Shown here piece after piece: positions 2,117-58,620 of a stretch of DNA of 64,000 bases. The notes beneath the pieces were generated by a model. That model searched no databases and was not told the origin of the DNA. It saw nothing but the letters and a program-made list of their open reading frames with translations. Made by a program: the position numbers and the translations under genes. The DNA lies in IMG/VR virus record IMGVR_UViG_3300032770_000001, positions 391,709-455,708 of that record; one strand, given 5' to 3'. Numbering within the stretch: position 1 is the first letter of the stretch; the number at the start of each line of letters is the position of its first letter.

Positions 2117-2767
2117 TTACTTAGTCTGTGCGATATCACGCCGCACTTGATCTTCTTCAGTCTTCCAGAGTTCACGCCACGCCATCAAGAAGTTGCTGAT
2201 GGTGTGGTCACTGACCTGAACCGAGTGCAGAGCACGTTTGTTCATTTCAATGATGTAGTGCATGAGCTTCGCGAATTTCACGCCTTCAAAGTTGATGTTG
2301 TCAACTTTGGCATCGTTCGCTTCGAGAAGCTGCTTACCTAACTCGCGTGCGCCCTTGAGTTGTTCCAAGGACGTTTTCATTCCCTCTTTGTCGTTAGAGC
2401 CGGATACCTTCAGTTCCTCAATGTAGCGGAGCAATGAAGCCATCTCCAGTGCAATCGTTTTGGAAATCTCTTCGTTGGTTGCGGACGGATCGGCAATCAA
2501 CTTCTCGATCTCCTGAATTTTCGACACACGTGTCGGCTTTTTCTTGTCTGCCTCGCTCTGACCTTCGACCGCAGCATCGGCAGCCTTTAGCAGCCCTGCG
2601 GCATCGACCTTCGCCGGGGCCGGGGTTTCCGGTGCTACCGGGAGGTTGCCTACCGCTGTGCTCGCTAAACGTTCAGCGACGGTTGTAGTTTCGGTTGCTG
2701 TTGATGTCACTTCTGCACCCTCTTCCTTAAAATCAACGCTCATACGTTGGGATGTTGACTCGTGCAT
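2117..2767 (-). CDS. Helical hypothetical protein (terminase small subunit is a weak possibility)
   Basis: 216 aa ORF coupled to the upstream gene by TAATG overlap; amphipathic helices. Function is a guess from size and context. Confidence 0.6.
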   Translation of the reverse strand: MHESTSQRMSVDFKEEGAEVTSTATETTTVAERLASTAVGNLPVAPETPAPAKVDAAGLLKAADAAVEGQSEADKKKPTRVSKIQEIEKLIADPSATNEEISKTIALEMASLLRYIEELKVSGSNDKEGMKTSLEQLKGARELGKQLLEANDAKVDNINFEGVKFAKLMHYIIEMNKRALHSVQVSDHTISNFLMAWRELWKTEEDQVRRDIAQTK

Positions 2768-4713
2768 TAAAAGTCTCCCAACTTCGATGAGTTCGGCATC
2801 TGCACATCGCCGAAATCACCGCTGTATTCGATGTCCGCCATCTTGGTGTCGCCCGGACGACCGCTGCTCGCAGTCAGTTCGAACTCAGCGAGAATTGAAC
2901 GTCCATCTTCCGGCACCGATCCGGTCTTGTGACCTTCAGATACCGTAGCGACCTTCTTGGTGCTGCCCTGCTTGTCCATACCGGGGAACGTTAACAACGT
3001 CCCACCAGTCAGACCGCAATGCATACCCTGACGGTACACGCATGTGCCGCACTTCGCAGCGCCCACAATCGGGTTGTGCACGGCGAGCTTGTTCTTGAGG
3101 AACGTGCAATCAATCTGCGACAACGCAACCTTGATCGGCTTATTCTTCAGGCTGGCAATGAAATCCTTCACTGCCTTGCTCGCCTTGGCAGACCCGACTT
3201 TGGCTGCCGCTGACTTGTAAATCTTCTCCAGTGAGTGACCCTTCTTGTGGTAGTGCTCGATCACGCTGGCATCGATTTCCGGACTTGCAGCCAGACGCTC
3301 ACGGCGCAACTGATCCGGGTTGGACTCGACGTAGTTCTGTGGAACGCGAGACAACGGGCTGGCTTTCATTGATTTCTCAAAGCCAGCAGTTTTCTCGATC
3401 TTCTTGCAGCACGCACATTTGGCAGCCCCAACCAGATTCATGGCGTGAACGCCACGCTCTTTCAGGAACTTCACATCGGCGGCAGCGAGAACAACCTGCC
3501 CGTTCACATTCGGACGCAGAGTCGCGACAAAACCAGACAACGCTTTGGCTGCCGGGTAGGTGCCGAACTTCTTCTCAGCGGCGGCTGTGATCGCTTTCAA
3601 GCTGTGACCCTTCTGGTGCAACTTCGCAACATGCGAAGAGTCCCACGAAAGCGGAGCCACGCGGTTAGCACGCTTCGCCTGCGCATCGACGTGACCGACG
3701 ACTGGAGCCGAAATGCCGGATGACGCCGTCTTCGGGCTCTTCGGCATAACCGGAGATTTGGTGCCATCGTTTCCATTGGCGATGTTCACCAAAGCAGCAC
3801 GCTTCATCTTTTCCGGCACACCCGCCGTCAGCTTGTTGACAATCGGAGTCAGTTCCTTGGTGTTTGCCACGATGGGAAGCTTGTACAGACCGCAAGTCTT
3901 CTGGGAACCGTTCTTCTGGAAGAACTGGCAACCCTGACATGCACTGATTTGCTTCACCGACGCCGCCTTCGGCTTAATGCCTGCGGCTTTCCACTGCTTT
4001 GCTTGGCGCAGGCAGTCGTTCGAATCCGAACCCTGCTTCTTGCGCTCATAGGTCGGCGAATTCTTGTCCATGTAAGTATTGGGCTCAAGATACGCCATAC
4101 CGAGCAGTCCCGCGTTGTCCTGCAAGTAGCGGGTGCCGATCTGGTGATTCATCAATTCCAATTCAGCCAGCTTGCGAGCGATCTTCGCCGGGGACACACC
4201 CTGATTGAGCAGATCGTGAATGTATTTCTTGACTTCGGCATCCGAGATGGCTTTCTTCTCGGCGCTGTTCTCAGCAAGATTGTTGTCCTTGCCAGCCTGT
4301 TCGAGACTCTGAGTCACTTCGGCGAACAGAGATTCGTCATCACCAAAACTGTTCTTGTAGTCCTGAGGGCTGCTGGCTTCGTGGTTGCGCCAGTTCTCAG
4401 CCGAGCCGCCGACGCCGGAGAATGCCTGATCCTTGTGCGCCATGCGATCAAGATGTGTCGAGCGGGCCTCAGCGAGGCGCTGCTTCTTCAAATCATTGAG
4501 GTTCGAGCTTTTGCCAGTCGGCCAGACCGGAGTGTGGCGGGAGGCGGACTCGGCGATGTCGTCCGTAAAATCCTCGTCCACGTACTGGTGCGTGCGGTCA
4601 AGCTGCTCTTCGCCAGATTCCTTAGCTTCGTCGAGACCGAGGTCCTTCCAAGCGGGTTCGCGATCTTCCAAAAGCTGGTCGATGAGCGGGGTGTACTTTT
4701 CTTTATCTGCCAT
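2767..4713 (-). CDS. K-x-A-containing putative head protein with internal helical+Cys repeats
   Basis: 648 aa, RBS AGGAG; repeats KGHSL...VGAAKCxxC; motifs KKAIS, KTAS, KTAG, KVAT. Confidence 0.8.
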   Translation of the reverse strand: MADKEKYTPLIDQLLEDREPAWKDLGLDEAKESGEEQLDRTHQYVDEDFTDDIAESASRHTPVWPTGKSSNLNDLKKQRLAEARSTHLDRMAHKDQAFSGVGGSAENWRNHEASSPQDYKNSFGDDESLFAEVTQSLEQAGKDNNLAENSAEKKAISDAEVKKYIHDLLNQGVSPAKIARKLAELELMNHQIGTRYLQDNAGLLGMAYLEPNTYMDKNSPTYERKKQGSDSNDCLRQAKQWKAAGIKPKAASVKQISACQGCQFFQKNGSQKTCGLYKLPIVANTKELTPIVNKLTAGVPEKMKRAALVNIANGNDGTKSPVMPKSPKTASSGISAPVVGHVDAQAKRANRVAPLSWDSSHVAKLHQKGHSLKAITAAAEKKFGTYPAAKALSGFVATLRPNVNGQVVLAAADVKFLKERGVHAMNLVGAAKCACCKKIEKTAGFEKSMKASPLSRVPQNYVESNPDQLRRERLAASPEIDASVIEHYHKKGHSLEKIYKSAAAKVGSAKASKAVKDFIASLKNKPIKVALSQIDCTFLKNKLAVHNPIVGAAKCGTCVYRQGMHCGLTGGTLLTFPGMDKQGSTKKVATVSEGHKTGSVPEDGRSILAEFELTASSGRPGDTKMADIEYSGDFGDVQMPNSSKLGDF

Positions 4714-19829: not shown

Positions 19830-20594
19830 CTAAAGACTCCCGGAGGCTGATTTCGCGCCTGCGGGGGTAACCTTTGCAGAAGATTTGTTCACTTCACTAA
19901 CACCCTCAGCACGCGGAATTTCGAGCTTACTCGGAGCCTTCGGTTGTCCGGCTGCGTCACGATCAGTGACGTATGCGTCGGAGCCAACGGCGGCTTCTTT
20001 TTCTTCAGGTTTCTCTTCCTTGTCTTCGGATTCGGACTTGTCCTCGGACTCGGATTTTTCTTCCTTCCCCTTCTCGAACGAGGGCTTTTCGTCAATCGGA
20101 GATTCCTGCGACTCTTCGCCCTTTTCCTCACCAAGCTCAAGCTCAGCCTTGCCTTCGTCAGTGAATGCTTGTTCGGCTGGGGTTGCGCCCAGATCGACAC
20201 CGAGAACCTCGGCTGCCATCTCGATAGCGGCTGCCTGCTCATCCAGTGCCTTGTAGGACTGACGGAGGGCGTCTGCCAGCATGTCCGGCTTTTCGTCGGC
20301 AGTCTGACGGAATCCCTTGGCGTAGTTACGGGCGGCGGCGACACGAACCTTTGCCGGAGCATCGGCGGCGGCACGGACGAGACCGAGATTGGTCTGGAGA
20401 CCTTCCATCCAGTCAGCCTGACGTGCGGACTTCTCTACCAGAGAAGCCAGAATCTTCTCAAATTTCTGCGGGTTCTTGGCAGCGGCACGCATCTTCTCGT
20501 ACTTCGCCGCCTCTTCCGCTTTACGGGCTTCCTTACGGGCTACGATAGCCTCACGGAGCGCCTTGCGGTCGATTGCTTTCTTTTCCTTTGCCAT
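19830..20594 (-). CDS. K-x-A-containing putative head/core protein
   Basis: 254 aa, GGAGG RBS, late promoter; RVAAA, KEAAV, KSAS; shares the TDRDxxGQPKAP module with 48685..50214. Confidence 0.85.
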   Translation of the reverse strand: MAKEKKAIDRKALREAIVARKEARKAEEAAKYEKMRAAAKNPQKFEKILASLVEKSARQADWMEGLQTNLGLVRAAADAPAKVRVAAARNYAKGFRQTADEKPDMLADALRQSYKALDEQAAAIEMAAEVLGVDLGATPAEQAFTDEGKAELELGEEKGEESQESPIDEKPSFEKGKEEKSESEDKSESEDKEEKPEEKEAAVGSDAYVTDRDAAGQPKAPSKLEIPRAEGVSEVNKSSAKVTPAGAKSASGSL

Positions 20595-20606
20595 GTTTCC
20601 TCCACC

Positions 20607-20627
20607 CTATTAAAGGGGTCAAAAAGT
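20607..20627 (-). promoter_or_regulatory. Putative late promoter (ACTTT-N13-TAG)
   Basis: Bipartite motif upstream of 20594. Confidence 0.55.
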
Positions 20628-20634
20628 TCAGTTG

Positions 20635-23600
20635 TTAGGCGACTTTCAGCCCGTCGCCCTGAATACCTGCAACAATATCTTGAATATAGCGGTGCTCGAC
20701 AACCACAGAGTCGCCCCAGTATGTTACCCCGCTTTCAGGGTTAGGCTCGCCGCTGCTGTAGCTTGAGTCGAGGTTTTCGATGATCCAGTCCTCAGCCGCC
20801 GCCGTCATTGGGGTCAACAGGAAGATGCCGCCCTCGTTGCGAACTTCAAAATCCGGCCCCTCGTAGGGAGCACCTTGTGGGGTGTACTGCGGCTTATCCG
20901 CCTTTTTCTTACGACCACGTGCGCCGGGGTGACCGCTTGACTTCTTGCTGCTGGTCAGCGGAAGTGCCTGCTGATTCGGATCGGGAGCAGGTGCTTCCGG
21001 TTGCTCTTCCTCGTACAGGTTGCCGCCGTACTGCATGAAAACCTCGTGCCCCTGCTTGAGTTCCTCGACCATATCTTCGATCTGGTAACGCTCGTGCCAG
21101 TACAGATTGCCGTTCGGATCAGCGAAGATTTCACCGGAGGTCAGAGCCCCGATGTCGGCGGGATTGACATTCTCCCAGCCGTTGGTGAAGAAGTCTTCCA
21201 TGAGTTCCCAGATGCTCTGGTACGTCTGCGCATCTTGCGGTCCACCCTGAGCAACTTCCTGAAGCAACTGTGCAGTCGGCTTCAGTTTGATGCCGCCCTT
21301 ACCGTAGAGGACATCGACGTAGGTGCCTTTGTCTTCGCCCTTGGTCGGCGTGCGTGCTTCCTGCGCATCCACTTTGTTCTGCTCGTCCTGCTGTTTCAAC
21401 TCATCAAGCGTCACAGCCGTTTTCTTTGATGCGACAGCGGAGTTCGGAACGTAACCGACTTCCGGCTGTTTTGGCTTCAGACCGAGTTGGTCTGGAGTCT
21501 TCGGATTGCCACGCTGCTTCATGTTGAGAATTGCTGGATTTGCCGCTTCCTTGTCAGATGCGATCACTTCACCTTCCTCGTCATCATCATCGAACGGGAC
21601 GTAGCCATCATAATCGGAACGCTCCGGATAGAATGCTGCCCATTCCGCCAATGCTTCAGCGTTGCCGCGACCGGATTCCTTGAAGCGAGCGATCATCTCG
21701 TTCAGATACTCATAGCCATGCGTGGTCAGCGGGTTCTTTAGGAACTCACCGCAGCCTGCGCAGTTCTGCGGACTGTCGGACTCTTGATCGAAGAACGGAC
21801 CTTTCGGATAGTTGTCGGAGTCATAGCTTGACTCGTCTTCCGGGTTCTCCGGGCCTTCGCCGTTCGCGTCGATTCTCTGCGCGATTTTTATAGCGCAGTC
21901 TTCGCACCACACGTCAGCGGCGTAGATGTATTCACCGTCGTTAGAACCACGGATACCACTGTCGGCACCGGGCTCGAATGCTTCTTTTTCCATTGTGCCC
22001 TCTTTCACTTGCTCGTTCTTAAATGTCACGAAACGGTGACGCCCACCGTGCAGAGAAGTTCCGCAGCAATCGCAAGGACGTTTCGAAAACTCATCGATGC
22101 CTTCGCCCGTCTCGCTGTCGAAGTCAGGAACCAGCCAACCCAATCTCTGGATGCCTGCCTGAATCTGCTCCATGCGCTTGTTAGCCTCTTCGCCCTGATA
22201 GTAATAATCAAGGCCGGAGTAGTCATCGTTCACTGCCGCTTGCAGACAGTCGTCGCACAACCACAAATTGTCCTGCTCAATTTCAGCGGCAGTTTTGTTT
22301 GCCTGAATGCCCATGTCTTTCAACATCTGCTTCTCTTCGTCCGTGGGGTTGTATTCCTTCTCGTGCCCGTGGAACTCTTCGATACCCGCAGGCTCTTCCA
22401 ATTCTACGTCACCGGGGGTGATGTAGTCCGCGAGGCTCTGCAACTCAGCCAGTTCCGCATAGCTAATGCGCTCGGCACGAAGTTGGCTACGGAGATATTC
22501 CAGACGCTCCTGAATTTCCTCTGGCTCCAACTCGTCCTCGTCCTCATCAATCCATGCCTTCTTGCTCGATGCTTCCTTGGAGCAAGTGCCGCAGTACCAC
22601 TTGTTGCCGATCTCGTGGCTGCCTTCGTCTACGTCAGATGAATCGAACACCTTACCGCAGCCAGCACATTCAACTTCGCGTGAAGAGGTCTTGTCGCTGC
22701 TTTCGACCGCATCCAGTCCCTCATCCACATGACGATCCATGCAGGATTCGTCGCCAGACTCAATCTCTTCGAGGTCGAGACCTTCGATGCTTTGCCCACC
22801 CTCGGCATCGACCACCGACCAAATCGCACCACACGGTCCGCACGTAACCCACCACTGTCCGTGCTCGAACGCAGGCACGCAACCTTCGTGAATCTCAGTG
22901 AGAGGGTGAGACGCGATTAGACGCTCTACTTCCATCTCCATTTCCGGAGTGTTCTGCTCCGTTTTCAACGCTGCTTTCTTCATGGTGCCCTCTTCTGACG
23001 ACATGTGGAATTTCTTGTTGGGAAGCTCCGGTGGGACGGTCTTCCGCTTCAGCCCTTCGTTTTCTTTCTCCTGTGGCAGCACAGCCATCGGTGCCCCCGG
23101 CTGTCCGGGGATCGGCTGCACTACCGGATTTGGTTCCGCTGTGGGTGCTTGCGGTTGCGCTGCTGGTGCCTGAACCGGAGCCGGAGCCGCCGCCACAGTC
23201 ATGGAAACAACCTTCTCACCCGGCTTGAGCTTCTTGGTAACGGCTTTCTCCGCTCCCTGATAATCGTTGCCGCCTACGGTTTCTTCACGCTGATTGCCTT
23301 TGGTGTCACGCAGGGTGACCTTCCACTTGGCTTCCTTCAACATCTTGATACCGTGATTGCGATTGACACTGTGCTCATTCGCGGTGTCTTCAGTCGTGCC
23401 CCATACCGGACAATTGCGGCACTGCCACATCTTCTCCGGAACGGTGACGCCCTTGAGAGCGTCCGGGTTGCGAGCTAACAACTTGTCCAAACGTCCAGCC
23501 GTCTTGCTTGCACCCTTCATTTTCTTATAAGCTTCGAATTTCTGATCCTGCGGTACACCCGGCATGTGTTCTCCACCACCACGACAAGGGCGTAAATTGC

Positions 23601-25683
23601 AGGTTACACATTCCAGACAACGAGGGCAATACAGATGCGTGCGCTCTTGCTCATCATAGTCCGGTTCCTCAGGCATGTCGGCAGGCAAGAGGTTCTCCGC
23701 AAATTCTGCGGTCTTTGACGCTTGCTTGAGCTTCGAATAACGTTCCCGCATCTGTGCTAATGTCTTTTCGTCGAAACGGATGATGTCGGCATTGCGCTTC
23801 AGACCCTCTTCAGAGCCAAATCCGCCAGTCACCAACTTCTCCTCATCGTTCACGAAATGGTAGGAACCGTCGTTGAGCTTCTCAACTTTCCACTTGGGGT
23901 CATCGAGTTTGATGCCAACGGTCTTCGGCCCGGCGGGTTTCTTGCCGCCATGAATGTATTGCTCGTAATAAGCATCGTGCTCTTCAGCACTGATTTTGCC
24001 AGCATAGCGCAATGCGTCAATCACGCCAGCGATGTAGTTGTAGGCGTTTGAATTCTTTGCTGAGTCATCCCAGATTTTCGTCAGGAAGGTGCCGACATCC
24101 AAACCACGGAGGCTATCCTTCAACTCGGCGACTTTAACTGCTCCGGCATGATAACTGCCTTGCGTGCGTCCATGCGGTGGACGCCCGGTGTCGCCTTCAG
24201 TGATCTGTGGCTGAATGCCATCATAGAATTGATCGCCGCCCTCAGCGCCGTCTTTCTTCTTAGGTTCGGTCTTCTTCATCAACTCCACGGTTTTGTCGAA
24301 GTTTTCGCTGTAGACCGGGCAATCGATGCGGTGCCGTCCATGATAGCCGCCGCAGCACTTTGAAGTGTCAATCGTCGGAACCGAAGTATCGGCAGCTTCT
24401 TTGCAAATGCAATTTTCCTTCACCCGGTCACACGCATCACAGTACGGCACACCAGCAGGCGGGTGAATATCCCGCTCAGTCTGAACCGCAGCCGCTTTCG
24501 GATCATTGATGCCGGGGACGATACCGTGTTCCCAATTCTTGCCACAGTCATTGCACTTGGCAGTCTCGAAGTCGGTCGGCATGAGCCCGTAGTCTGAGGA
24601 GCCGCAGTGTGGGCACTTCGGTTTAGCCGATGCCGTGGCGTGTACTTTCGCCTGCGGTTCTTTCATCTGAGTGATGAGATTGATAAGTTGGTATCCAGTC
24701 TCTTCGCCACGAGGCAACTGTCCTTCGGTCGCAAACTCTTCAAGTAGACCGGGCAGTTCCGAGTAGTAACGCTTCAATGAGTCCTGACCGAGGTTGGTGA
24801 CTTTCAGCCAGTCCTGTACCAGATCGCTCACCGTAATCTTGGCTTCCCCAGTGCTCTCCTGTGCGTGCTTCCAGAACAGTAAGAGAACGATCATGTTGTA
24901 CTTGGCAGCCGTGCGGGATACCTTGGTTGGGAGCCATGCGGCGAATCGCTTCGCTACGTTCTTGAATTCCTGCTCGGATTCAAACTCAGTGTGCGGCGAT
25001 GGAGCATTCAACTGCTGACTGTCGATCAAACTATAAGTTTCGTCCTCCTCGTGCTTGCCGCCAGCAGGCTGCTCGCCGGAGACTTCCTCCGGATGCTGCA
25101 CCTGACGGATATAGCTCTTGGCACGCTCGATGCGGAAGGTAAACTGCTTCTTCAGGAATTCCGTAATCTGTTCGGCCACTGGGAGCTTCTTGACGCCAGC
25201 GGGAAAGTTCTTGATGGCTCGCGGAAAGTCCTGCATCGCCTTGCCGTGCTGGAGCACGTAAAGGATGACGTGATAGATCGCCTCATCCTTCAGTTCGAAG
25301 TCGAGGGTTGTGGATGTGAGTGAGGGAACGAAGACTGTCTGAAACCACTTCGACCAATCCATCTTGGGATCGACCGGATATCCCGCCTGCTCAATGTAGG
25401 ACTTGACGAACTTGTCGAAATCCTTGTTGTAGGCGAAGACGTAGCGGATTCGTGACGCAATACGCGCCTGACCCGGTGAGATCGGGTGGAAATTGGCTGG
25501 GGTCTGAACAGGCTTCCCGGTGTACGGGTCGGCCAACCTGAAGGCGTAGCCGTCCGGTCCGGCGACTTTAGACACCACCCGGTAGGCGGAACCATCGAGA
25601 GTATCGACAATTTGCCCCGGCGCGATAAGGCGGGAAAACTTGGTCAGGTTCGCCGCTGGTACTCGTACAGCGTCCTGAGGCAT
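20635..25683 (-). CDS. 1682-aa modular polyprotein: sigma-like N-terminal domain plus more than 15 K-x-A-delimited modules
   Basis: Linkers KAAA, KEAA, KVA, KQASKTA, KGASKTA, KEA, KKAA, KEASSKKA, KTAA, KKTA, KKKA separate Zn-finger and acidic modules. Confidence 0.9.
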   Translation of the reverse strand: MPQDAVRVPAANLTKFSRLIAPGQIVDTLDGSAYRVVSKVAGPDGYAFRLADPYTGKPVQTPANFHPISPGQARIASRIRYVFAYNKDFDKFVKSYIEQAGYPVDPKMDWSKWFQTVFVPSLTSTTLDFELKDEAIYHVILYVLQHGKAMQDFPRAIKNFPAGVKKLPVAEQITEFLKKQFTFRIERAKSYIRQVQHPEEVSGEQPAGGKHEEDETYSLIDSQQLNAPSPHTEFESEQEFKNVAKRFAAWLPTKVSRTAAKYNMIVLLLFWKHAQESTGEAKITVSDLVQDWLKVTNLGQDSLKRYYSELPGLLEEFATEGQLPRGEETGYQLINLITQMKEPQAKVHATASAKPKCPHCGSSDYGLMPTDFETAKCNDCGKNWEHGIVPGINDPKAAAVQTERDIHPPAGVPYCDACDRVKENCICKEAADTSVPTIDTSKCCGGYHGRHRIDCPVYSENFDKTVELMKKTEPKKKDGAEGGDQFYDGIQPQITEGDTGRPPHGRTQGSYHAGAVKVAELKDSLRGLDVGTFLTKIWDDSAKNSNAYNYIAGVIDALRYAGKISAEEHDAYYEQYIHGGKKPAGPKTVGIKLDDPKWKVEKLNDGSYHFVNDEEKLVTGGFGSEEGLKRNADIIRFDEKTLAQMRERYSKLKQASKTAEFAENLLPADMPEEPDYDEQERTHLYCPRCLECVTCNLRPCRGGGEHMPGVPQDQKFEAYKKMKGASKTAGRLDKLLARNPDALKGVTVPEKMWQCRNCPVWGTTEDTANEHSVNRNHGIKMLKEAKWKVTLRDTKGNQREETVGGNDYQGAEKAVTKKLKPGEKVVSMTVAAAPAPVQAPAAQPQAPTAEPNPVVQPIPGQPGAPMAVLPQEKENEGLKRKTVPPELPNKKFHMSSEEGTMKKAALKTEQNTPEMEMEVERLIASHPLTEIHEGCVPAFEHGQWWVTCGPCGAIWSVVDAEGGQSIEGLDLEEIESGDESCMDRHVDEGLDAVESSDKTSSREVECAGCGKVFDSSDVDEGSHEIGNKWYCGTCSKEASSKKAWIDEDEDELEPEEIQERLEYLRSQLRAERISYAELAELQSLADYITPGDVELEEPAGIEEFHGHEKEYNPTDEEKQMLKDMGIQANKTAAEIEQDNLWLCDDCLQAAVNDDYSGLDYYYQGEEANKRMEQIQAGIQRLGWLVPDFDSETGEGIDEFSKRPCDCCGTSLHGGRHRFVTFKNEQVKEGTMEKEAFEPGADSGIRGSNDGEYIYAADVWCEDCAIKIAQRIDANGEGPENPEDESSYDSDNYPKGPFFDQESDSPQNCAGCGEFLKNPLTTHGYEYLNEMIARFKESGRGNAEALAEWAAFYPERSDYDGYVPFDDDDEEGEVIASDKEAANPAILNMKQRGNPKTPDQLGLKPKQPEVGYVPNSAVASKKTAVTLDELKQQDEQNKVDAQEARTPTKGEDKGTYVDVLYGKGGIKLKPTAQLLQEVAQGGPQDAQTYQSIWELMEDFFTNGWENVNPADIGALTSGEIFADPNGNLYWHERYQIEDMVEELKQGHEVFMQYGGNLYEEEQPEAPAPDPNQQALPLTSSKKSSGHPGARGRKKKADKPQYTPQGAPYEGPDFEVRNEGGIFLLTPMTAAAEDWIIENLDSSYSSGEPNPESGVTYWGDSVVVEHRYIQDIVAGIQGDGLKVA

Positions 25684-25695: not shown

Positions 25696-25926
25696 TTAGT
25701 CGATGTGGATGTCGTTCGGGTCGCCTTCGGTCTTCTCGTCTTCCTTCATGATCTGCTCAAGGGTCTTGAGGTACTCTTCGTGATCCTCAAAAGCCTGCGG
25801 GTCATGCGGAGCGCCCTTTTCGTCCTTGATCGTGGACTGAGCTTTCTTCAGTCCAAGGCGGTCAAGCTCGCCTGCGTACAGGCGGTTCATTGCGGATGAC
25901 TCTGCTGCTGCGAATTTCTTTGCCAT
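25696..25926 (-). CDS. Small putative head protein
   Basis: 76 aa, AGGAG RBS; KKFAAA, KKAQ. Confidence 0.75.
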   Translation of the reverse strand: MAKKFAAAESSAMNRLYAGELDRLGLKKAQSTIKDEKGAPHDPQAFEDHEEYLKTLEQIMKEDEKTEGDPNDIHID

Positions 25927-26004: not shown

Positions 26005-26676
26005 TTAGGTGATCGTCACCGTTGCGCTCGCGGTCAGCCCCAGAGGGTGCCCCGTCGCGTCGTAGCACGTCATGGTCAGCAGGATAGTGTGAGTCCACCC
26101 CGTGCCCTTGATGTAAATACCTGATCCAGCAGTAGTTATGCGACCGGAATCGAACGGCGGATCGATGCCGTTGTTTCCCGTAATCTCAATCTGAGCCACG
26201 TTGATGGTGTCCCAGATCAGGGTGACGGAATGTCCTGCCGTCGTGTTGCTGGGATTGGCTGCCAGAGCCGCCTGTGGCGGCAGGCTGCTGTCCCCGGTGG
26301 ACTGATAGCTCGCGATCAAAGCGAAACCGGGCACAATCGGTGCCGCCGAGACGACGGCGATGACCTGCTGTACAAATGGGTCCGGGGTTGCCGTGCAACC
26401 AATGTAGTTGGCATCACCGACGTAAATAGCCGACAGGTTGTGGAAGCCGACTGTCAGGATGGTGAGATCGAGTTCTGCCGTGGAAATTGTGCTGGTCGGC
26501 GAGAGCGGCGTCAGGTTTACGGTCCCGAGCAGGTTGACGCCATCGAAGAAATTGACCGCGCCTGATGGCGGGGCAACGTTAAACGAAGACGCCGTGACCG
26601 TGACCGTCATCGCGATCTGTTGTTCGAACTGCGACGGCGACGGCGAAACGACGAGAGTGGCGGTTGTGGATACCAT
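26005..26676 (-). CDS. Ig-like (Big_3 type) domain virion protein
   Basis: STTATLVVSPSPS...PSGAVNFFDGVNLLGTVNL...GFHNLSAIYVGDANY matches the bacterial Ig group 3 pattern. Confidence 0.8.
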   Translation of the reverse strand: MVSTTATLVVSPSPSQFEQQIAMTVTVTASSFNVAPPSGAVNFFDGVNLLGTVNLTPLSPTSTISTAELDLTILTVGFHNLSAIYVGDANYIGCTATPDPFVQQVIAVVSAAPIVPGFALIASYQSTGDSSLPPQAALAANPSNTTAGHSVTLIWDTINVAQIEITGNNGIDPPFDSGRITTAGSGIYIKGTGWTHTILLTMTCYDATGHPLGLTASATVTIT

Positions 26677-27306: not shown

Positions 27307-30300
27307 TTAGATTCGGCGACCCCACTGGTAGTTGATCGAAACGTTGGTTCCAGTGATAGTCTGCACGCCGCCGTCCTGACCACCGTTCTGGAACTGTGTG
27401 AAGCCGAAGAACGGGTGCACTTTGTAGCAACCCAGCGAAGCCCCAGCCGGAGCGTTCGTCGGGTTCTGCACGGCGTACCAGTCCCACCAGCCATGAACCG
27501 CAGCACTCTCAAGGCTGCTGTACGGAGCCAGCAAGTTCGGACTCTGACTGTCTATGCTGATGTTCGCCACGTCGGTCGCGATACCAAGGCAGTTGGGATC
27601 GAACGAAGCTGCCGGAGCCGTGCCAACAGCGGCGAGGCTGTTACCCAGACGAGCCGCATCTATTGCTACCTGTGAGGCGTTGTAGTCAACCAGATAGAAC
27701 GGGCCGAACTCAGTGATTGTGTTGCTGGTCGCGGAATTGCGCCCATGCTGCACAGTCACACGAAGATTCGTGATACCAGTTTGACGGGCAAACGAGTACG
27801 CATAACCGTTATGGGCACGCCACAGCGGAGTGATTTGCGTGTAGCTAGTTCCGCCGTTGGTTGAAACTTCAAACTTCAAACCACGGCACAAATTGCGATT
27901 CTGCAAGAATTTGTAAGTTGAACCCTCAGCAGGGTTGACTTGCGAACCGTAGCTGTAAAACACCAGATCAACGAAGTTGCAGGTTGTCTGCAATACTGAA
28001 GTGCTGAGACGGAACGTGCTGACCGATGGCAAGCTGGAGTTCGTTGCCGTGATGTTCAAGCGGTAGTAACGGTACGAACCCGGTGTCGTCACATTATAGG
28101 CGTAGCCGCGTGACGCCGATACACCAGTGCGTGTATCCAGCGTAGTCCACGAGGAGTTATCATTCGAACCCTGCAACTGGAAATTCGTCGGCAGACCGCT
28201 GCTTGGGTTATCCGAAGTGTCATAAACGGTGCGGAAACCATAAGACAGAACTGTCTGAGCATTGCCGAGACCGAGATCGATTTCGAGCCATTGTGTCGGA
28301 GAGCCACTAGCCTGCCAGAACTCTTGCGGGTTATTCATGAAGGCTTTCCAGCTTGCGGTAGTCGTACCGCTTTGTGAACTGCTGGAAGCCGTGTAAGTGT
28401 TGGAGCCCACCGTCCATGAGTACGGGTTGCTGCCTGTGACGATGTTAACGTTCGCCGGAGCATAAGCATAGCTTCCGGTAGCGAATCCGTTCGGCGTCCA
28501 TACCAGAACCAGCGGTGAGGCGTCGAAGCCTACGTTAGAGCCGTCCAATTTGTTCCACGAAGCCGACGTTGTCCAGCCCTTATAAGCTGTAGTCAACGAC
28601 GCAGTGTTCGGCGTTGTGCTGGTCGGAGCAGTCCAAGTCGCACCACCCGGATCGGTGTCGATAAAGTACGGAGTGATGGCTTCTTCTTGAGCAATGGTGC
28701 GGCTATCAGTGTTGGTGAACGTCTGACCCGCGAATTGTGCCCACGAAGAGCGCAACTTACGAGCAAACTTGGTGTTGCCATAGCACATGTTCCACGTGTG
28801 GAACTCGCCGTTAGTCCATGAAGTCGAAGACAACGGGCCGAACTGTACAGCCAAACCATACGGCAGGTTGATCGTGCTGGTGTAGCCGCCAGCATACGCA
28901 CCCACAGTGTAGGGGTTGCTCGAAGCGTCGGAGAAACTGTCCGCCATTACCCAATTGCCGCCCGAATATTTCCAGTAAGTTGGCAGGAATGCCATGCCCT
29001 GCCCAGCCGCACGACCATAGGTCGCGTTTGAGGGCAAACCATCCTGTCCACCACCAGCGCAGCGCAAGAACACCATGTAATTGTCGGTCAACGAAACTGG
29101 GAACATCCACGCCCCACGGTCGAGGAACTGTCCGGAAACCGGAGTCAAATCCATCCAAGACCAATAATCTTGCTGAACGCTTTGAATCGATGGAGGATTG
29201 CTGCTGTAGCTGTTGCGTTGAATCAACGACAAGCTGGTCGGCGAACTCCAGTTAAACCCCGGAGGAGCCAAGTAAATTGGGCACGTAGCGTTGTTCGAGT
29301 GAATCGGCTGATGCGGGAAGAACGTGGTGCGGTCGGCGTTCGTCGCATAGTCACGTGCGTGCGTAATCGAGATCGGCTGCGTGGCCGGGTTGAACTGGCT
29401 CGGATTGAAGCTATCGTTCGCGAACAATGTGCTTGACGCGACAGCGGTCAACTGCGTATTGCTCAGCGAAGCCGTAGAGCCGGATACGTTGAGTGTAAAG
29501 ACCGATGCGCAATGCCAGCTACCCTGAACCAACAGGATGTTTGGAGCCACGTCATGCATGAATGCGTTGATGTCGTAGAACCAAAAATCTGGGTTCTGGC
29601 TTGGTGAAGTCGCATTGGCACCGAAGTTCGTACCGTACTGAATCGGTGAAGAACCGTTGATCTTGGACGTGTTCCATGTCGCAGCGACCGGATCGTATGC
29701 CTGCACTTGCCAGTTGACATTAGTGACTGCACCGAAAGCGTTCGATACAGTGTACGGGCCGCCGCCCGAAACGCTAACGTCCTCGCACAGAATGTAGAGC
29801 TTGCCATCGCGAGGGGAAATCATCTCGCTCAATGAACGACCGTTATGACGCCCGGTGTTTCCACTGAAGGTGATCGAACCCCATGCGCCCGTACCGATGA
29901 AGTAATTGACGACACCAATGCGAGCCGTAGCGACCAAGCCCGTCTGTGTAGTGCGCGGATCGGCTGTCATGGTGCCGTAAAGCGCCCACAGTTCGTAACA
30001 AGTCGCCGTACCTGTGTCGGAGGCGTTGGTGTAGTTGCCGACCGTTGTCGGGACTTGGAAGCTGCTTGTGGATAATCCGGTTGCCGACACCACATAGGTG
30101 ATGTTGTTAATTCCGGACTCCTGCGTGCCTGTGATGTTCACCACATCGCCAGCTTGGAAATTATTTGCTGCCGTCACAGTCAGAACGCCGCCAGTTGCGG
30201 AAGTCGCCGTGATCGGCCCGGTGATTGTGCGCGTCTTCAATGCGCCGTAAGCCTCGCCCACGTGCGCAACTGCTGGAGCATTGGTCGCGAAACTGAATGA

Positions 30301-31893
30301 ACCGGAGCCAGCCAGTTCGAGAACACCGTTGGTCTGCGTGAAATCGTAACGAGCCAGTTTGCCATCCTCAGAGAGGAAGAAGACCTGATATCCCAATACC
30401 TGCGTAGAGTTGCTGGTATAGTAAGTCGGCACAGTCGCAACACCTGCAATACGCATCGCGGTGGAGCCTGTCCACGTATCCGCAAGATCAAAGAACAAGA
30501 GCGGCACCATCGAAGACTTATTGCTCCAGATCGAGCATTTGGTGTCCATCACCAAGCCGTAATATTCTTCGTTGATGTTGAATGTCGCCGCCTGACGAAC
30601 GCGGAAGTCCGGGTTATAAACTGCAATACCACCCGAAGTTTCTCCCTGTGCGGAGTAAACACTGTGCACCGTGTTGATGGTGAATTGGGTGCTGGTTGCA
30701 GTAGCCACAGTCCAAAGCTGACCATTGAGCCACGTGTTGTTGCCGTTGGTCAAACCCTGAATGAAGACAATCTGGTTTGTCGAGAACGTATTTTTCGCAG
30801 TGACCGTAACTACGGTGCCGGATGAGGCCACAGAAGTGATTGCCGCACCCACATCACGCCCACCTGCCCAAACATATTCCTGTTGATCGTTGACGTAGGT
30901 ATACGGGTTCTGAATATTCTGACTTGAAACTACGACGCCCGTGCCGAGTGTCTGACCATCTTCCTCATACGGATAAGCGAATGAGTTGAAGCCGTTGTCA
31001 AATACTTTTGCCAAATGGAACGATAGACCACGACTGTTCAGCTTGCGCACACCTGTGATCTGGAACAGTTCGCGGTAGTTGTCGCTCGCGGCTGAGTTAA
31101 GACCGCCGCTCTGACGCAGAGGATCGCTAGTCGCCGGGTATGTCTGGCCTAAAGTATTTGGAGTTTCCGCACCCGACCACGCTGGCAACTGACCTGACAC
31201 GCTGTTGTTGTCATTAAATCCCGTCATGCGGAGCGAAGGGCGATTCTCCATGAAAAACTTCAGGCTGCCGGAGCCAGTTGACTGTGAGCCCGTGCTTGCA
31301 ATGTGGAAAATCATGTAGCTCGCAGGCATGTAGATCGAGCGTGTCAACGCCGAGGACATGTTAATGATCGAGTCTGTACCATCGGAGGGCGAAGAGTTCG
31401 AGTCTAGCCACTGATGAGCAATGTCCGCCGTCATCGGCCATGACGCTACACCATGCCCGTATACGGGTTCATAATCCGCAGATTCTCCATTTGGATCGTG
31501 GCTATAATCGGCATAGACAAGACCACCGACAAGACTCCCAATGTAGCCGTCACGAAAACCGCTCACAGCAGGCGGAACAGCGGTTCCCACGAATGCCATT
31601 GTGCGAACGAAATATCCACCGTTCGGACGCCATGCCTGACCACTGGACGTACCATCACCGGAGCCCGTTGTCTGCATGTAGCAATCGCTGCTCGGCGAGG
31701 CTGGGTTTGTTGAAGCCTGAGGATTGATGCTTCCCCATGTACTCAGAAGATGGAAGTAACGTGCGGTCTGTCCGTTTACGTTGTCCGGAATGATACCGAA
31801 TTCTGAAGCGAATGCACTGGCATTGCGTGTGACCGGAGAAGTAGCAAGAAACTGCCAGTTTAGATCGGCGATTTGATATGGGTGAATTGCCAT
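27307..31893 (-). CDS. Large tail fibre / receptor-binding protein with a discoidin (F5/8 type C)-like domain
   Basis: 1528 aa, S/T/G/N-rich; ASSSSQ...WKAF...QWLEIDLG...PTNFQLQGSNDNSSWTTLD...YRYYRLNIT. Confidence 0.85.
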   Translation of the reverse strand: MAIHPYQIADLNWQFLATSPVTRNASAFASEFGIIPDNVNGQTARYFHLLSTWGSINPQASTNPASPSSDCYMQTTGSGDGTSSGQAWRPNGGYFVRTMAFVGTAVPPAVSGFRDGYIGSLVGGLVYADYSHDPNGESADYEPVYGHGVASWPMTADIAHQWLDSNSSPSDGTDSIINMSSALTRSIYMPASYMIFHIASTGSQSTGSGSLKFFMENRPSLRMTGFNDNNSVSGQLPAWSGAETPNTLGQTYPATSDPLRQSGGLNSAASDNYRELFQITGVRKLNSRGLSFHLAKVFDNGFNSFAYPYEEDGQTLGTGVVVSSQNIQNPYTYVNDQQEYVWAGGRDVGAAITSVASSGTVVTVTAKNTFSTNQIVFIQGLTNGNNTWLNGQLWTVATATSTQFTINTVHSVYSAQGETSGGIAVYNPDFRVRQAATFNINEEYYGLVMDTKCSIWSNKSSMVPLLFFDLADTWTGSTAMRIAGVATVPTYYTSNSTQVLGYQVFFLSEDGKLARYDFTQTNGVLELAGSGSFSFATNAPAVAHVGEAYGALKTRTITGPITATSATGGVLTVTAANNFQAGDVVNITGTQESGINNITYVVSATGLSTSSFQVPTTVGNYTNASDTGTATCYELWALYGTMTADPRTTQTGLVATARIGVVNYFIGTGAWGSITFSGNTGRHNGRSLSEMISPRDGKLYILCEDVSVSGGGPYTVSNAFGAVTNVNWQVQAYDPVAATWNTSKINGSSPIQYGTNFGANATSPSQNPDFWFYDINAFMHDVAPNILLVQGSWHCASVFTLNVSGSTASLSNTQLTAVASSTLFANDSFNPSQFNPATQPISITHARDYATNADRTTFFPHQPIHSNNATCPIYLAPPGFNWSSPTSLSLIQRNSYSSNPPSIQSVQQDYWSWMDLTPVSGQFLDRGAWMFPVSLTDNYMVFLRCAGGGQDGLPSNATYGRAAGQGMAFLPTYWKYSGGNWVMADSFSDASSNPYTVGAYAGGYTSTINLPYGLAVQFGPLSSTSWTNGEFHTWNMCYGNTKFARKLRSSWAQFAGQTFTNTDSRTIAQEEAITPYFIDTDPGGATWTAPTSTTPNTASLTTAYKGWTTSASWNKLDGSNVGFDASPLVLVWTPNGFATGSYAYAPANVNIVTGSNPYSWTVGSNTYTASSSSQSGTTTASWKAFMNNPQEFWQASGSPTQWLEIDLGLGNAQTVLSYGFRTVYDTSDNPSSGLPTNFQLQGSNDNSSWTTLDTRTGVSASRGYAYNVTTPGSYRYYRLNITATNSSLPSVSTFRLSTSVLQTTCNFVDLVFYSYGSQVNPAEGSTYKFLQNRNLCRGLKFEVSTNGGTSYTQITPLWRAHNGYAYSFARQTGITNLRVTVQHGRNSATSNTITEFGPFYLVDYNASQVAIDAARLGNSLAAVGTAPAASFDPNCLGIATDVANISIDSQSPNLLAPYSSLESAAVHGWWDWYAVQNPTNAPAGASLGCYKVHPFFGFTQFQNGGQDGGVQTITGTNVSINYQWGRRI

Positions 31894-38895: not shown

Positions 38896-39855
38896 TTAGT
38901 TCTCGCCGTAGTTGGCGGTCGAGTTGAAGCGACCATTGACCGTAAGACGCTGCACGCCGGACGGGTTGAACACGAGGAAGCCGAGGTTCTCGAAGATCGA
39001 GAAGCCGATCTGACGGAGGTCAGGACGGTCGGCGCTCATGACCGTGAGCGGAATACGCTCTGGGATAACGCCGAGGAACTCTGCGTCCGCCAGAATGTAG
39101 ATCGAGCCGTAGCCGACCTTACGCGACTGGAGGAGCGTTGCGCCCCAGAGATAGCCCATCACGCCCGTTTTCAACAGCTTGCGCTGTGTTTCGCGGTCGA
39201 TGTTCTGTTGGGTCCACTTCAACAGGTCCGTGTAGTCACGGGGGTTGAAGAAGACGAACGCGACTGAGAGGTCATGACGCTGCACCTGACCAAAGCCGTC
39301 TGCCATCGAGTTGATGTCAATCGGAGCGTTGATCGGAATGTCAGGGTTGTAGACCGGATCATTCGAGTTCTTACCCGCTGCGCTGTTCGCGACACCGTCA
39401 AACAGAACGAACACGTATCCGTCTTCGGCTGCGCCCACTTCGGCTTTCGCCAAGTTCAGTGAACGAGCAACCAAGTCGAAACGGCGCTCTTTGATCTGCG
39501 TGATCGGGATCATCGGATTGGACACGATTTCGAACGTCGGAACCGTGACGCGCTTCGGTTTTGTAACGCGGACGATGTCACCACCTTCTTCGCCGACGAT
39601 GAATGCTTCGACGAAGGACGAACCCGGAGTCGAGCCAACGGTCATCGCGTTGACATCGAATTCCTTGTCGTAGATGGGCAGTGCGCCATCCGGAAGAGTT
39701 TCGACCATGAGAGCCTTGCGAGCAATGCTCATATAGTCACGGCGACGACGCAGGGACGGACCGAGCGAAGCCGCAAGCTTCTGACGCCCACCCGCCGTCT
39801 TCAAAAGTTGGCCGAGCATTTGCGTCTGCTGTTGTGTGCGAGAAAGTTGTGCCAT
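38896..39855 (-). CDS. Major capsid protein (HK97 fold)
   Basis: 319 aa; gene order protease-scaffold-decoration-MCP-terminator; DYMSIARKALMVETLPDGALPIYDKE, VPTFEIVSNP, GFSIFENLGFLVFNP; GAGGAG RBS. Confidence 0.9.
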   Translation of the reverse strand: MAQLSRTQQQTQMLGQLLKTAGGRQKLAASLGPSLRRRRDYMSIARKALMVETLPDGALPIYDKEFDVNAMTVGSTPGSSFVEAFIVGEEGGDIVRVTKPKRVTVPTFEIVSNPMIPITQIKERRFDLVARSLNLAKAEVGAAEDGYVFVLFDGVANSAAGKNSNDPVYNPDIPINAPIDINSMADGFGQVQRHDLSVAFVFFNPRDYTDLLKWTQQNIDRETQRKLLKTGVMGYLWGATLLQSRKVGYGSIYILADAEFLGVIPERIPLTVMSADRPDLRQIGFSIFENLGFLVFNPSGVQRLTVNGRFNSTANYGEN

Positions 39856-47778: not shown

Positions 47779-47799
47779 CCTATTAAAGGATTGAAAAGC
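47778..47799 (-). promoter_or_regulatory. Putative late promoter (GCTTT-N12-TAG) abutting the ATG
   Basis: gcttttcaatcctttaatagg-ATG. Confidence 0.55.
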
Positions 47800-58619: not shown

Positions 58620-58620
58620 G

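What the first reader, a model, noticed from the sequence alone, without database searches (positions are those of the whole stretch)
20635..22560. Acidic polyprotein modules resemble stand-alone small phage early proteins
Seen: consecutive D/E-rich modules: ERLEYLRSQLRAERISYAELAELQSL; LWLCDDC...EFSKRPCDCCG; YIYAADVWCEDC...YDSDNYPKGP...NPLT; IGALTSG...YWHERYQI; DFEVRNEGGIFLLTP...VVVEHRYIQDIVAGIQGDGL. From recollection, not a search, these patterns occur as separate small genes in other phages. Inference: early genes were captured into the packaged polyprotein; acidic ones are candidate DNA mimics or defence inhibitors.
Basis: inference. Interest (0 to 1): 0.7.

Follow-up and report, generated by a model that had tools for sequence, protein, structure and literature searches.

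The report
Phage fusion protein of small acidic domains
One 1682-residue gene at the end of the virion-gene block of a 455-kb wetland phage strings together small acidic domains that in thousands of other phage sequences are separate tiny genes, which fits, but does not prove, a protein that rides in the virion and delivers them at infection.

Summary
Window 20635-22560 is the C-terminal 642 residues of one real ORF (20635-25683, minus strand, 1682 aa). It holds five acidic domains (pI 4.05-4.35) separated by short basic linkers.

All five domains belong to uncharacterised families, none in Pfam, that occur as free-standing small genes bounded by stop codons:
- ERLEYL: about 55 aa, 1310 hits.
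- LWLCDDC and YIYAAD: four-Cys domains. The unrestricted search of the whole stretch gave 3683 representative hits, most of the best being these two as 85-250 aa proteins.
- IGALTSG: about 147 aa.
- DFEVRN: about 77 aa.

None has a second copy in this genome.

The protein belongs to a family with a conserved N-terminal domain of about 340 aa, a Pro/Ala spacer and a TVxPELP motif. Behind these the domain set varies: LWLCDDC and DFEVRN occur only here, and ERLEYL also in one relative. The gene keeps its place behind capsid and tail genes.

Variants from other samples fall on third codon positions at 28 of 30 sites, and independent contigs bridge both LWLCDDC junctions.

Packaging, cleavage at the repeated ASKTA-type linkers, early expression of the free genes, and DNA mimicry or anti-defence activity remain untested. 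The closest known kind is the polyvalent protein of phages, but without its hallmark enzyme or MuF domains.

The parts
20635..25683 (-). Whole gene, 1682 aa (P0001): N-terminal domain, about ten small modules, 35 Cys in CxxC-type pairs, stop codon at 20635-20637
   Evidence: third-codon-position variants in other samples
24649..25683 (-). Conserved N-terminal domain, residues 1-345: a small beta-barrel plus two helical subdomains joined by an acidic loop. It defines the family and is the proposed virion anchor
   Evidence: 28-42% identity to 11 long proteins and to Tunturi 5 gp345; model pLDDT 73 with no fold match
23002..23040 (-). Conserved motif TVPPELPNKKFHM (residues 882-894), placed after a Pro/Ala-rich spacer (residues 831-881)
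   Evidence: Occurs once in 10 of 12 family members, including Tunturi 5 gp345
22564..22983 (-). Acidic module with two zinc-ribbon-like CxxC pairs, residues 901-1040 (pI 4.30).
   Evidence: only sub-threshold Pfam zinc-ribbon / Lar hits
22294..22563 (-). ERLEYL module, residues 1041-1130 (core 1054-1104), pI 4.26
   Evidence: 1310 homologs at E<=1e-3, mostly 52-75 aa free-standing proteins, 60-80% identical. Small ORFs bounded by stops in MAG and phage contigs
21994..22293 (-). LWLCDDC module, residues 1131-1230, four conserved Cys, pI 4.35. Present in no other member of the N-domain family
   Evidence: PHROGs 8253/7225/3034, E 7e-5 to 5e-4; free-standing 164-aa gene on a 229-kb contig; both junctions bridged in other samples
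21529..21993 (-). YIYAAD module, residues 1231-1385, four invariant Cys, pI 4.05, with the leader MEKEAFEPG
   Evidence: Over 100 free-standing homologs of 85-250 aa that start at residue 2-5; Erythrobacter phage XM05_117; model pLDDT 85 with no solved fold match
20959..21402 (-). IGALTSG module, residues 1428-1575, pI 4.19
   Evidence: The free-standing 147-aa gene P0307 has an upstream stop and a ribosome-binding site. Its N-terminus MEKSAITLDELKQQDE is colinear with the linker SKKTAVTLDELKQQDE here
20638..20856 (-). DFEVRN module, residues 1610-1682, pI 4.05. Present in no other member of the N-domain family
   Evidence: 26 free-standing homologs, mostly 62-90 aa. Fused to ERLEYL in small proteins elsewhere (P0066, L019)
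21403..21528 (-). Basic linker, residues 1386-1427 (pI 9.9), containing ASKKTA
20857..20958 (-). Basic linker, residues 1576-1609 (pI 10.2), containing SSKKSS
   Evidence: the same LP(L/M)xSSKKxAT linker occurs in P0004 and P0008
22981..22993 (-). In-frame AGAGGGCACCATG (GAGGG plus ATG, codon M901) at a module boundary
21991..22003 (-). In-frame AGAGGGCACAATG (GAGGG plus ATG, codon M1231) at the LWLCDDC/YIYAAD boundary
   Evidence: not conserved at DNA level in relatives
19830..20594 (-). Downstream 254-aa helical/acidic protein (P0306), always next to the fusion gene in relatives. In Tunturi 5 gp345 it is fused to the N-terminal domain
25696..25926 (-). 76-aa ORF ending 12 nt upstream of the gene, with its own ribosome-binding site (MAKKFAAAE...)

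Best explanation
The region is the C-terminal cargo of a modular fusion ('polyvalent-type') protein of a 455-kb phage.

Shown:
- It is one real gene encoding a conserved N-terminal domain of about 340 aa, a Pro/Ala spacer with a conserved TVxPELP motif, and a train of small domains.
- The last five domains are acidic. Each belongs to a large uncharacterised family of free-standing small phage proteins.
- The domain set differs between relatives, while the N-terminal domain and the gene's place behind capsid and tail genes stay fixed.
- The linkers carry a repeated peptide, A-S/N-K-(K)-T-A or M-E/K-K-x-A-x. It is conserved at the peptide level and resembles the N-termini of free-standing genes.

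Inferred:
- Small genes were fused in frame behind an anchor domain that brings the chain into the virion.
- The chain, whole or cut at the linkers, enters the cell with the DNA.
- The domains therefore act before any phage gene is expressed, most plausibly by binding conserved host proteins or nucleic-acid enzymes, for host takeover or anti-defence.
- DNA mimicry is one possibility among several.
For: Real gene: (28 of 30 variants at third codon positions; junctions bridged in other samples).

Free-standing homologs of all five domains:
- 3683 hits, most of the best 150 being 85-250 aa proteins with the domain starting at residue 2-5.
- 1310 hits. for the other two domains.
- stop codons on both sides of the small genes.

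No second copy in the own genome.

Variable cargo behind a constant N-terminal domain.

Conserved position: relatives carry an MCP homolog 89-94% identical, tail-fibre homologs, then the fusion gene, then the P0306 homolog. In the window, sheath, MCP and tail protein lie on the same strand.

Linkers:
- ASKTA-type motif occurs four times here and once in the rest of the genome.
- Different Ser codons are used at these sites.
- Linker SKKTAVTLDELKQQDE aligns with the N-terminus MEKSAITLDELKQQDE of a free gene.
- Real genes of this phage begin MAKK/MAKE.

Precedent: polyvalent proteins whose domains also occur solo (PMC5512222) and injected T4 internal proteins that block restriction (PMC12373910).
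Against: - There is no direct evidence of packaging. The only 'virion structural protein' label on a homolog is a structure-based annotation, and the word search of PMC11924767 found no mention of mass spectrometry.
- The N-terminal domain matches no known head- or tail-associated fold.
- No MuF, S78 or S77 protease was found in the genome, and no peptidase domain in the protein, so cleavage has no identified enzyme.
- No domain matches a known anti-defence family at threshold.
- Acidity alone does not show DNA mimicry.
- The embedded YIYAAD copies cluster together and carry a leader that the free copies lack, so not all linkers are fossil N-termini.
Confidence: 0.5

Rival explanations
1. A late-expressed cytoplasmic multi-domain protein that is not packaged. 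The fusion only co-regulates several small host-directed or assembly-related domains, and the N-terminal domain has a function of its own, for example binding RNA polymerase or another phage protein.
For: No packaging evidence exists. The N-terminal model's weak structural neighbours are RapA Tudor-like domains and sigma factors, at TM 0.17-0.28 and not significant. Free-standing homologs lie in non-structural gene arrays.
Against: The gene keeps a conserved position inside the virion-gene block across relatives. In Tunturi 5 the N-terminal domain is fused to the homolog of the downstream gene and lies beside tail-fibre genes. Variable cargo behind a constant N-terminal domain is the pattern described for packaged polyvalent proteins and MuF-anchored toxins.
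Confidence: 0.25
2. A purely structural virion component, such as internal head body or scaffold-like material, or a tail or fibre accessory. The acidic zinc-binding modules would serve assembly or DNA condensation rather than acting on the host.
For: The gene lies next to tail-fibre and Ig-like domain genes. It is always followed by a helical/acidic, scaffold-like protein. From my own knowledge, giant phages carry abundant acidic internal head proteins.
Against: The same domains are far more often free-standing tiny genes in arrays of small ORFs away from structural genes, and in phage-plasmid-like and MAG contigs. The cargo set changes between close relatives whose capsid protein is 89-94% identical. 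That is unusual for a structural part.
Confidence: 0.15
3. The direction is reversed: the long fusion protein is ancestral, and the free-standing small genes arose from it by fission.
For: Embedded YIYAAD copies form supported groups and share a leader. The tree is unrooted and poorly resolved, and the AU test was not finished.
Against: Free-standing copies are far more numerous and diverse: 103 of 117 YIYAAD sequences, and families of hundreds to thousands of clusters. LWLCDDC and DFEVRN occur in one of 12 family members, and ERLEYL in two. The closest LWLCDDC relative (63% identity) is a free gene.
Confidence: 0.08
4. An artefact: several small genes joined by assembly or sequencing errors, or a chimeric contig.
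For: The record is a metagenome assembly. Two in-frame ribosome-binding-site-like sequences followed by ATG lie at module boundaries.
Against: There is no stop codon in 5 kb. Independent metagenomes give uninterrupted relatives of 570-2005 aa. Contigs from other samples bridge both LWLCDDC junctions, and variants sit at third codon positions.
Confidence: 0.02

Closest known systems
Polyvalent proteins of phages and conjugative elements (Iyer, Burroughs, Anand, de Souza, Aravind 2017; PMC5512222)
   Same: Both have many domains in one polypeptide. The domains also occur solo and in other combinations. Both are encoded beside virion genes. The proposed logic is delivery with the DNA so that the domains act before gene expression.
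   Different: None of the hallmark domains was found: zincin-like peptidase, ArdC-N, methylases, ARTs, SNF2/DarB helicases, MuF or portal fusion. The cargo here is a set of small acidic, partly zinc-binding domains of unknown function behind a new N-terminal domain.
T4 internal proteins Ip1-3 (injected inhibitors of GmrSD type IV restriction; PMC12373910)
   Same: Small, fast-evolving, non-homologous proteins proposed to be carried in the head and injected to neutralise defences. Each has a short leader.
   Different: The T4 proteins are separate genes, each with its own N-terminal capsid-targeting leader. Here the domains are chained behind one large N-terminal domain, and no T4-type protease was detected (where the control did not ring, so this is inconclusive). 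Neither packaging nor function is shown here.
MuF-anchored polymorphic toxins / MuF-fused effectors of temperate phages (from my own knowledge; MuF fusions are also described in PMC5512222)
   Same: A constant N-terminal domain sits in the virion-gene block and is followed by a variable C-terminal cargo.
   Different: There is no MuF domain. The structural match to a MuF/VIP2 phage protein is not significant (TM 0.16). The cargo is a train of several small domains, not one toxin.
Proteolytically processed head and inner-body proteins of giant phage phiKZ (from my own knowledge)
   Same: A giant phage with large head-associated precursors that are cut at a short repeated motif into several pieces.
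   Different: No sequence similarity was found. The linker motif here (ASKTA type) differs, and neither a protease nor cleavage is shown.
DNA-mimic anti-restriction proteins (Ocr, ArdA)
   Same: Strongly acidic small proteins of mobile elements.
   Different: No sequence or fold similarity was detected. Two of the modules are four-Cys zinc-type domains, unlike Ocr and ArdA.

Membership tests
Polyvalent proteins (Iyer et al. 2017) | Two to fifteen distinct domains in one polypeptide | tested here: met
   At least ten modules. Five in the finding have independent homolog families
Polyvalent proteins (Iyer et al. 2017) | The same domains occur solo and in other combinations | tested here: met
Polyvalent proteins (Iyer et al. 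2017) | Encoded by a phage or mobile element in the context of virion or transfer genes | tested here: met
   455-kb virus record; same strand as sheath, MCP and tail protein; synteny conserved in relatives
Polyvalent proteins (Iyer et al. 2017) | Carries the family's recurrent conflict domains (peptidase, ArdC-N, methylase, ART, helicase, nuclease) or a MuF/portal anchor | tested here: not met
   No Pfam family at threshold in P0001 or in six long relatives; no Mu_F in the genome
Polyvalent proteins (Iyer et al. 2017) | Packaged in the virion and delivered into the host | not testable with these tools
   Needs virion proteomics. The only support is gene position and a structure-based annotation of Tunturi 5 gp345
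T4-type internal proteins | Short N-terminal capsid-targeting sequence removed by a gp21-family (S77) prohead protease | tested here: inconclusive
   No S77 match in the genome, but the control genomes did not ring either. Repeated linker peptides exist, but cleavage is unknown
DNA-mimic anti-restriction proteins (Ocr, ArdA) | Sequence or fold membership in the Ocr or ArdA families | tested here: not met
   No Pfam hit; no PDB sequence hit for the two Cys modules; no fold hit for YIYAAD. The other modules were not folded
DNA-mimic anti-restriction proteins (Ocr, ArdA) | Strong negative charge arranged to imitate the DNA backbone | tested here: inconclusive
   Net charge and pI fit. The surface arrangement was not analysed and DNA-enzyme binding is not testable here
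Lar restriction-alleviation family (PF14354) | Score above the Pfam gathering cut-off (28.6 bits) | tested here: not met
   13.6 and 17.2 bits for residues 356-384 and 994-1029, outside the finding's five modules
MuF-anchored phage effectors | N-terminal Phage_Mu_F domain | tested here: not met
   BFVD match to a VIP2/MuF protein at TM 0.16 only

The most novel reading that the evidence does not exclude
The N-terminal domain of about 340 aa plus the TVxPELP motif is a previously unrecognised virion-loading anchor of large soil and wetland phages. The ASKTA / MEKxA linkers are maturation cleavage sites. The phage would then inject a cocktail of small acidic proteins released from one precursor. 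Under this reading the five widespread 'dark' small-protein families (ERLEYL, LWLCDDC, YIYAAD, IGALTSG, DFEVRN) are immediate-acting host-takeover or anti-defence effectors, encoded as free early genes in other phages.
Probability: 0.25. Interest if true: 0.8.

Novelty: new variant of a known kind. Interest (0 to 1): 0.55.

Why it matters
Small phage genes of unknown function are the largest unexplored part of phage genomes. Here five such families, each with tens to thousands of members and none in Pfam, are tied together by fusion into one protein that sits in a virion-gene block. That gives a concrete, testable hypothesis for all of them: they act at the very start of infection.

The work also defines a new family with a conserved N-terminal domain and exchangeable cargo. 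The family includes a cultured phage, Tunturi 5, whose gp345 carries the N-terminal domain. Packaging of that domain could therefore be tested directly.

The very high conservation of the 55-aa ERLEYL protein (60-80% identity) in contigs binned with bacteria of several phyla points to a conserved target.

Tried and rejected
- **Family scans.** Pfam and PHROG scans of the whole protein, of ten pieces and of the free-standing homologs gave nothing at threshold, except three function-unknown PHROGs for LWLCDDC.
- **Long relatives.** Pfam on six long relatives gave nothing.
- **Cultured phages and plasmids.** tblastn against them gave only Erythrobacter phage XM05 (YIYAAD), Tunturi 5 (N-terminal domain) and one Enterobacter plasmid (LWLCDDC).
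- **Solved structures by sequence.** PDB profile searches for the two Cys modules gave nothing.
- **Fold searches, YIYAAD model.** Nothing in PDB (best VIA-align Z 4.0) and only uncharacterised small proteins in AFDB.
- **Fold searches, N-terminal model.** No significant match. RapA-Tudor, sigma-factor and MuF/VIP2 neighbours at TM below 0.3 were rejected as evidence.
- **Paralogs.** No paralogs of the LWLCDDC or YIYAAD modules in the own genome. The whole-protein search of the genome found no further copy of any module.
- **Protease and MuF.** S78, S77 and Mu_F searches of the own genome gave none.
- **In-frame GAGGG+ATG sites.** The two sites were considered as internal starts or fossil ribosome-binding sites. 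They are not conserved at DNA level in relatives, so this remains an open curiosity.
- **Co-clustering.** Other modules were not found next to free-standing copies.
- **DarB-like neighbour.** The 1478-aa ORF next to the gp348/gp349 homologs has no Pfam hit, so no DarB-like neighbour as in Tunturi 5 was found.
- **AU test.** The test for a single origin of the embedded YIYAAD copies did not finish in time.
- **P0014.** It was at first taken as a free-standing IGALTSG gene, but it has no upstream stop within its contig. It was replaced by P0307, P0308 and P0311, which do.
- **Complex prediction.** No job was run, because no binding partner is claimed.
Full report
**What is there**

The window is the last 64 kb of a 455,708-bp virus record. 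The finding (20635-22560) is not a set of genes. It is the C-terminal 642 residues of a single ORF at 20635-25683 on the minus strand, 1682 aa, stored as P0001.

The stretch has D+E 20.4%, K+R 9.0%, net charge -73 and pI 4.31. A crude ORF set of the same genome averages 11.1% D+E.

The stretch resolves into five acidic domains (residue numbers of P0001):

| Module | Residues | pI |
|---|---|---|
| ERLEYL | 1041-1130 | 4.26 |
| LWLCDDC | 1131-1230 | 4.35 |
| YIYAAD | 1231-1385 | 4.05 |
| IGALTSG | 1428-1575 | 4.19 |
| DFEVRN | 1610-1682 | 4.05 |

Two basic linkers (pI about 10) lie before IGALTSG and before DFEVRN.

**Is the ORF real?**

- Independent metagenomes give uninterrupted relatives of 570-2005 aa.
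- A Logan contig of 73 kb holds the stretch unchanged, though it may come from the source sample.
- Short contigs from three other wetland samples cover parts of the stretch. One spans 22208-22398, the ERLEYL/LWLCDDC junction. Another spans 21905-22173, the LWLCDDC/YIYAAD junction.
- 28 of the 30 variant sites lie at 20635+3k, which is the third codon position of this frame. That is the signature of purifying selection on the protein.

**Do the modules occur as separate small genes?**

Yes, for all five.

- **LWLCDDC and YIYAAD.** An HMMER search of residues 1041-1682, with no length restriction, against 1.84 billion representative proteins gave 3683 hits at E<=1e-3 and 600 at E<=1e-10. Most of the best 150 are proteins of 85-250 aa in which one of these two domains begins at residue 2-5.
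- **ERLEYL.** The piece alone finds 1310 proteins, mostly 52-75 aa and 60-80% identical over the core RLEYLRGELRAERISYGELAELQSLA..I.PGDVELLEAAGVPEF.
- **DFEVRN.** The piece finds 26 proteins, mostly 62-90 aa.
- **IGALTSG.** The piece finds free genes of 110-175 aa.

The last three searches accept only candidates of similar length, so they show that short forms exist, not how common long forms are.

I checked the DNA directly. The small genes are bounded by stop codons on both sides:
- L001, L005, L006 and L016-L025.
- L029, L030, L032 and L033, which also have ribosome-binding sites.

One candidate, P0014, has no upstream stop within its contig and was set aside.

None of the families is in Pfam. 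LWLCDDC matches three PHROGs of unknown function. The ESM Atlas neighbours of YIYAAD and ERLEYL are clusters of viral hypothetical proteins.

In this phage's own genome the LWLCDDC and YIYAAD domains have no second copy. A whole-protein search found none of the others.

**Context of the free genes**

- **LWLCDDC (P0153).** It lies in a run of about 35 small unannotated ORFs on a 229-kb contig.
- **YIYAAD.** It is XM05_117 of Erythrobacter phage XM05, in a row of small hypothetical genes.
- **ERLEYL (P0210).** It lies in an array of overlapping small ORFs at the end of a 113-kb contig. It also occurs in contigs binned with Acidobacteriaceae, Dehalococcoidia, Saccharimonadales, Microlunatus, Thermoanaerobaculia, Rickettsiales and Gaiellaceae.
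- **IGALTSG (P0311).** It lies near endonuclease VII and RNase H genes.
- **An LWLCDDC-containing protein.** It lies in a small-gene array of an Enterobacter plasmid, next to a DUF5906 gene.

These are the kinds of places where early or accessory genes lie, but no expression data support the word 'early'.

**The protein family**

Long hits share the first 340 or so residues of P0001 at 28-42% identity:
- P0002, 1915 aa
- P0015, 1892 aa
- P0021, 1620 aa
- P0010, 1435 aa
- P0064, 617 aa
- Six distinct IMG/VR loci encoding proteins of 570-2005 aa

Tunturiibacter phage Tunturi 5 gp345 (667 aa) shares the first 200 or so residues.

Profile searches give this cargo matrix:

| Protein | Cargo modules detected |
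|---|---|
| P0001 | ERLEYL, LWLCDDC, YIYAAD, IGALTSG, DFEVRN |
| L007 | ERLEYL, YIYAAD, IGALTSG |
| P0002 / L011 | YIYAAD, IGALTSG |
| P0064 | IGALTSG |
| L012, P0010, L014, P0015, P0021 | YIYAAD, at residue 585-770 rather than 1250 |
| L009, L013 | none of the five |

Where P0001 has residues 1105-1231, which include LWLCDDC, L007 has 29 residues. The closest relative of that module is a free gene at 63% identity.

A motif, [KR]xT[VI]xPE[LI]P..K[FY]HM, follows a Pro/Ala-rich spacer and occurs exactly once in 10 of the 12 proteins, including Tunturi 5 gp345. In the distant relatives it lies near the C-terminus. In P0001 it is followed by 788 more residues of modules.

A quick tree of 117 YIYAAD domains groups the embedded copies: two supported groups, and 4 label changes against 7.8 expected. 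YIYAAD is therefore probably an old resident. The tree is poorly resolved and the AU test did not finish.

**Position in the genome**

The gene is co-directional with a tail sheath gene (50704-54642), the major capsid protein gene (38896-39855), a tail protein gene with an F5/8 type C domain (27307-31893) and an Ig-like domain gene (26005-26676).

In relatives the same order recurs: a capsid protein 89-94% identical, tail-fibre and Ig-like homologs, the fusion gene, and then a homolog of the 254-aa protein encoded at 19830-20594. That downstream protein aligns with the C-terminal part of Tunturi 5 gp345 (E 4e-9 in the pairwise comparison). The two are therefore one polypeptide there and neighbours here.

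The 'virion structural protein' label of gp345 is a structure-based annotation. The word search of PMC11924767 found no mention of mass spectrometry.

**Linkers**

A-S/N-K-(K)-T-A occurs four times in P0001, at residues 655, 725, 1128 and 1418. It occurs once in the rest of the genome's ORFs.

Related forms sit at the other boundaries: MKKAAL at 901, SSKKAW at 1039, MEKEAF at 1231 and SSKKSS at 1577. The four ASKTA sites use different codons, including TCA versus AGC for Ser, so the conservation is at the peptide level.

The free IGALTSG gene P0307 starts MEKSAITLDELKQQDE, colinear with SKKTAVTLDELKQQDE in P0001. Genes of this phage often begin MAKK or MAKE. This fits linkers that derive from the N-termini of fused genes.

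However, embedded YIYAAD copies in distant relatives share a leader, MEKAAYNPG, that free copies lack. The linker peptide may therefore have a function of its own, such as a hinge or a cleavage site.

Two in-frame AGAGGGCACNATG sequences (GAGGG at ribosome-binding-site distance from ATG) lie at M901 and M1231. They are not conserved at the DNA level in relatives. Internal initiation or a fossil ribosome-binding site are both possible and untested.

No S78, S77 or MuF homolog was found in the genome.

**Structure**

The YIYAAD domain folds with confidence: pLDDT 85, above 95 in the core. Four invariant Cys bring together two knuckles, followed by helices.

It matches no solved structure (Foldseek E>=2.5; VIA-align Z<=4.0). 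In AFDB it matches only uncharacterised small proteins.

The N-terminal domain model (pLDDT 73) shows a small beta-barrel and two helical subdomains, with no significant match.

**Interpretation**

The protein is best described as a new variant of the polyvalent-protein theme (PMC5512222): many small domains that are solo genes elsewhere, chained behind a constant N-terminal domain, in a virion-gene block.

It lacks all hallmark domains of that class, so I do not file it as a member. Functionally the nearest analogy is the set of injected T4 internal proteins that block restriction enzymes (PMC12373910).

The following are inference:
- **Packaging.** About even odds.
- **Cleavage.** Unknown.
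- **Early expression of the free genes.** Unknown.
- **DNA mimicry or anti-defence activity.** Plausible but unsupported beyond charge and context.

The very high conservation of ERLEYL across contigs assigned to different phyla argues for a conserved target rather than a strain-specific defence protein. That is a point against a narrow anti-defence reading for this module.

Noticed in passing
window 19830-20594 (minus); L002 7962-9965: The 254-aa helical/acidic protein encoded just downstream aligns with residues 525-630 of Tunturi 5 gp345, whose N-terminus is the N-terminal domain of the fusion protein. The two are fused there and adjacent here, and the adjacency holds in five relatives.
   Followed up: partly
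window 23002-23040 (minus): The motif [KR]xT[VI]xPE[LI]P..K[FY]HM follows a Pro/Ala-rich spacer and occurs exactly once in 10 of 12 proteins with the N-terminal domain. Its function is unknown; a docking or cleavage site is possible.
   Followed up: partly
window 22981-22993 and 21991-22003 (minus): Two exact in-frame copies of AGAGGGCACNATG (a ribosome-binding-site-like GAGGG plus ATG) lie at module boundaries M901 and M1231. They are not conserved in relatives at the DNA level.
   Followed up: partly
window 20606-20616 and 47779-47789 (minus): Exact CCTTTAATAGG lies directly upstream of two gene starts. Two matches were found against 0.26 expected, and 3 of 100 shuffles reached two. It may be a promoter or regulatory element of the late genes.
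   Followed up: no
window 38896-39855 versus L009, L011, L014: The 319-aa major capsid protein is 89-94% identical in contigs whose fusion-protein N-terminal domain is only 28-42% identical and whose cargo differs. The fusion gene evolves much faster than the capsid.
   Followed up: partly
G000:C1:342438-353417 (outside the window): A 3659-aa ORF holds the only other ASKTA motif in the genome. It may be a second modular giant protein.
   Followed up: no
L016-L025; P0186-P0305: The ERLEYL protein of about 55 aa is 60-80% identical in contigs binned with Acidobacteriota, Chloroflexota, Patescibacteria, Actinomycetota and Rickettsiales. This is unusually high conservation for a tiny phage protein.
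   Followed up: partly
L019 663-1046; P0066 (L028 622-1194): Small proteins of 127 and 190 aa fuse ERLEYL to a DFEVRN-like domain. These two modules therefore also combine outside the large protein.
   Followed up: partly
window 2117-4713 (minus); L002 11253-13362: Two genes here are homologous to Tunturi 5 gp348 and gp349, which there precede a DarB-like antirestriction gene. The following 1478-aa ORF in this genome has no Pfam hit.
   Followed up: partly
window 56915-57490 and 58071-58757 (minus); L011, L013, L014: Two paralogous proteins of about 190-228 aa have homologs directly upstream of the fusion gene in several relatives.
   Followed up: no
window 25696-25926 (minus): A 76-aa ORF with its own ribosome-binding site ends 12 nt before the fusion gene's start. 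Its function is unknown.
   Followed up: no
window 24295-24375 (P0001 residues 437-463): A short Cys-rich stretch matches phrog_27432, a 37-residue profile of unknown function, at E 6e-5. Modules in the N-terminal half may therefore also have free-standing relatives.
   Followed up: no
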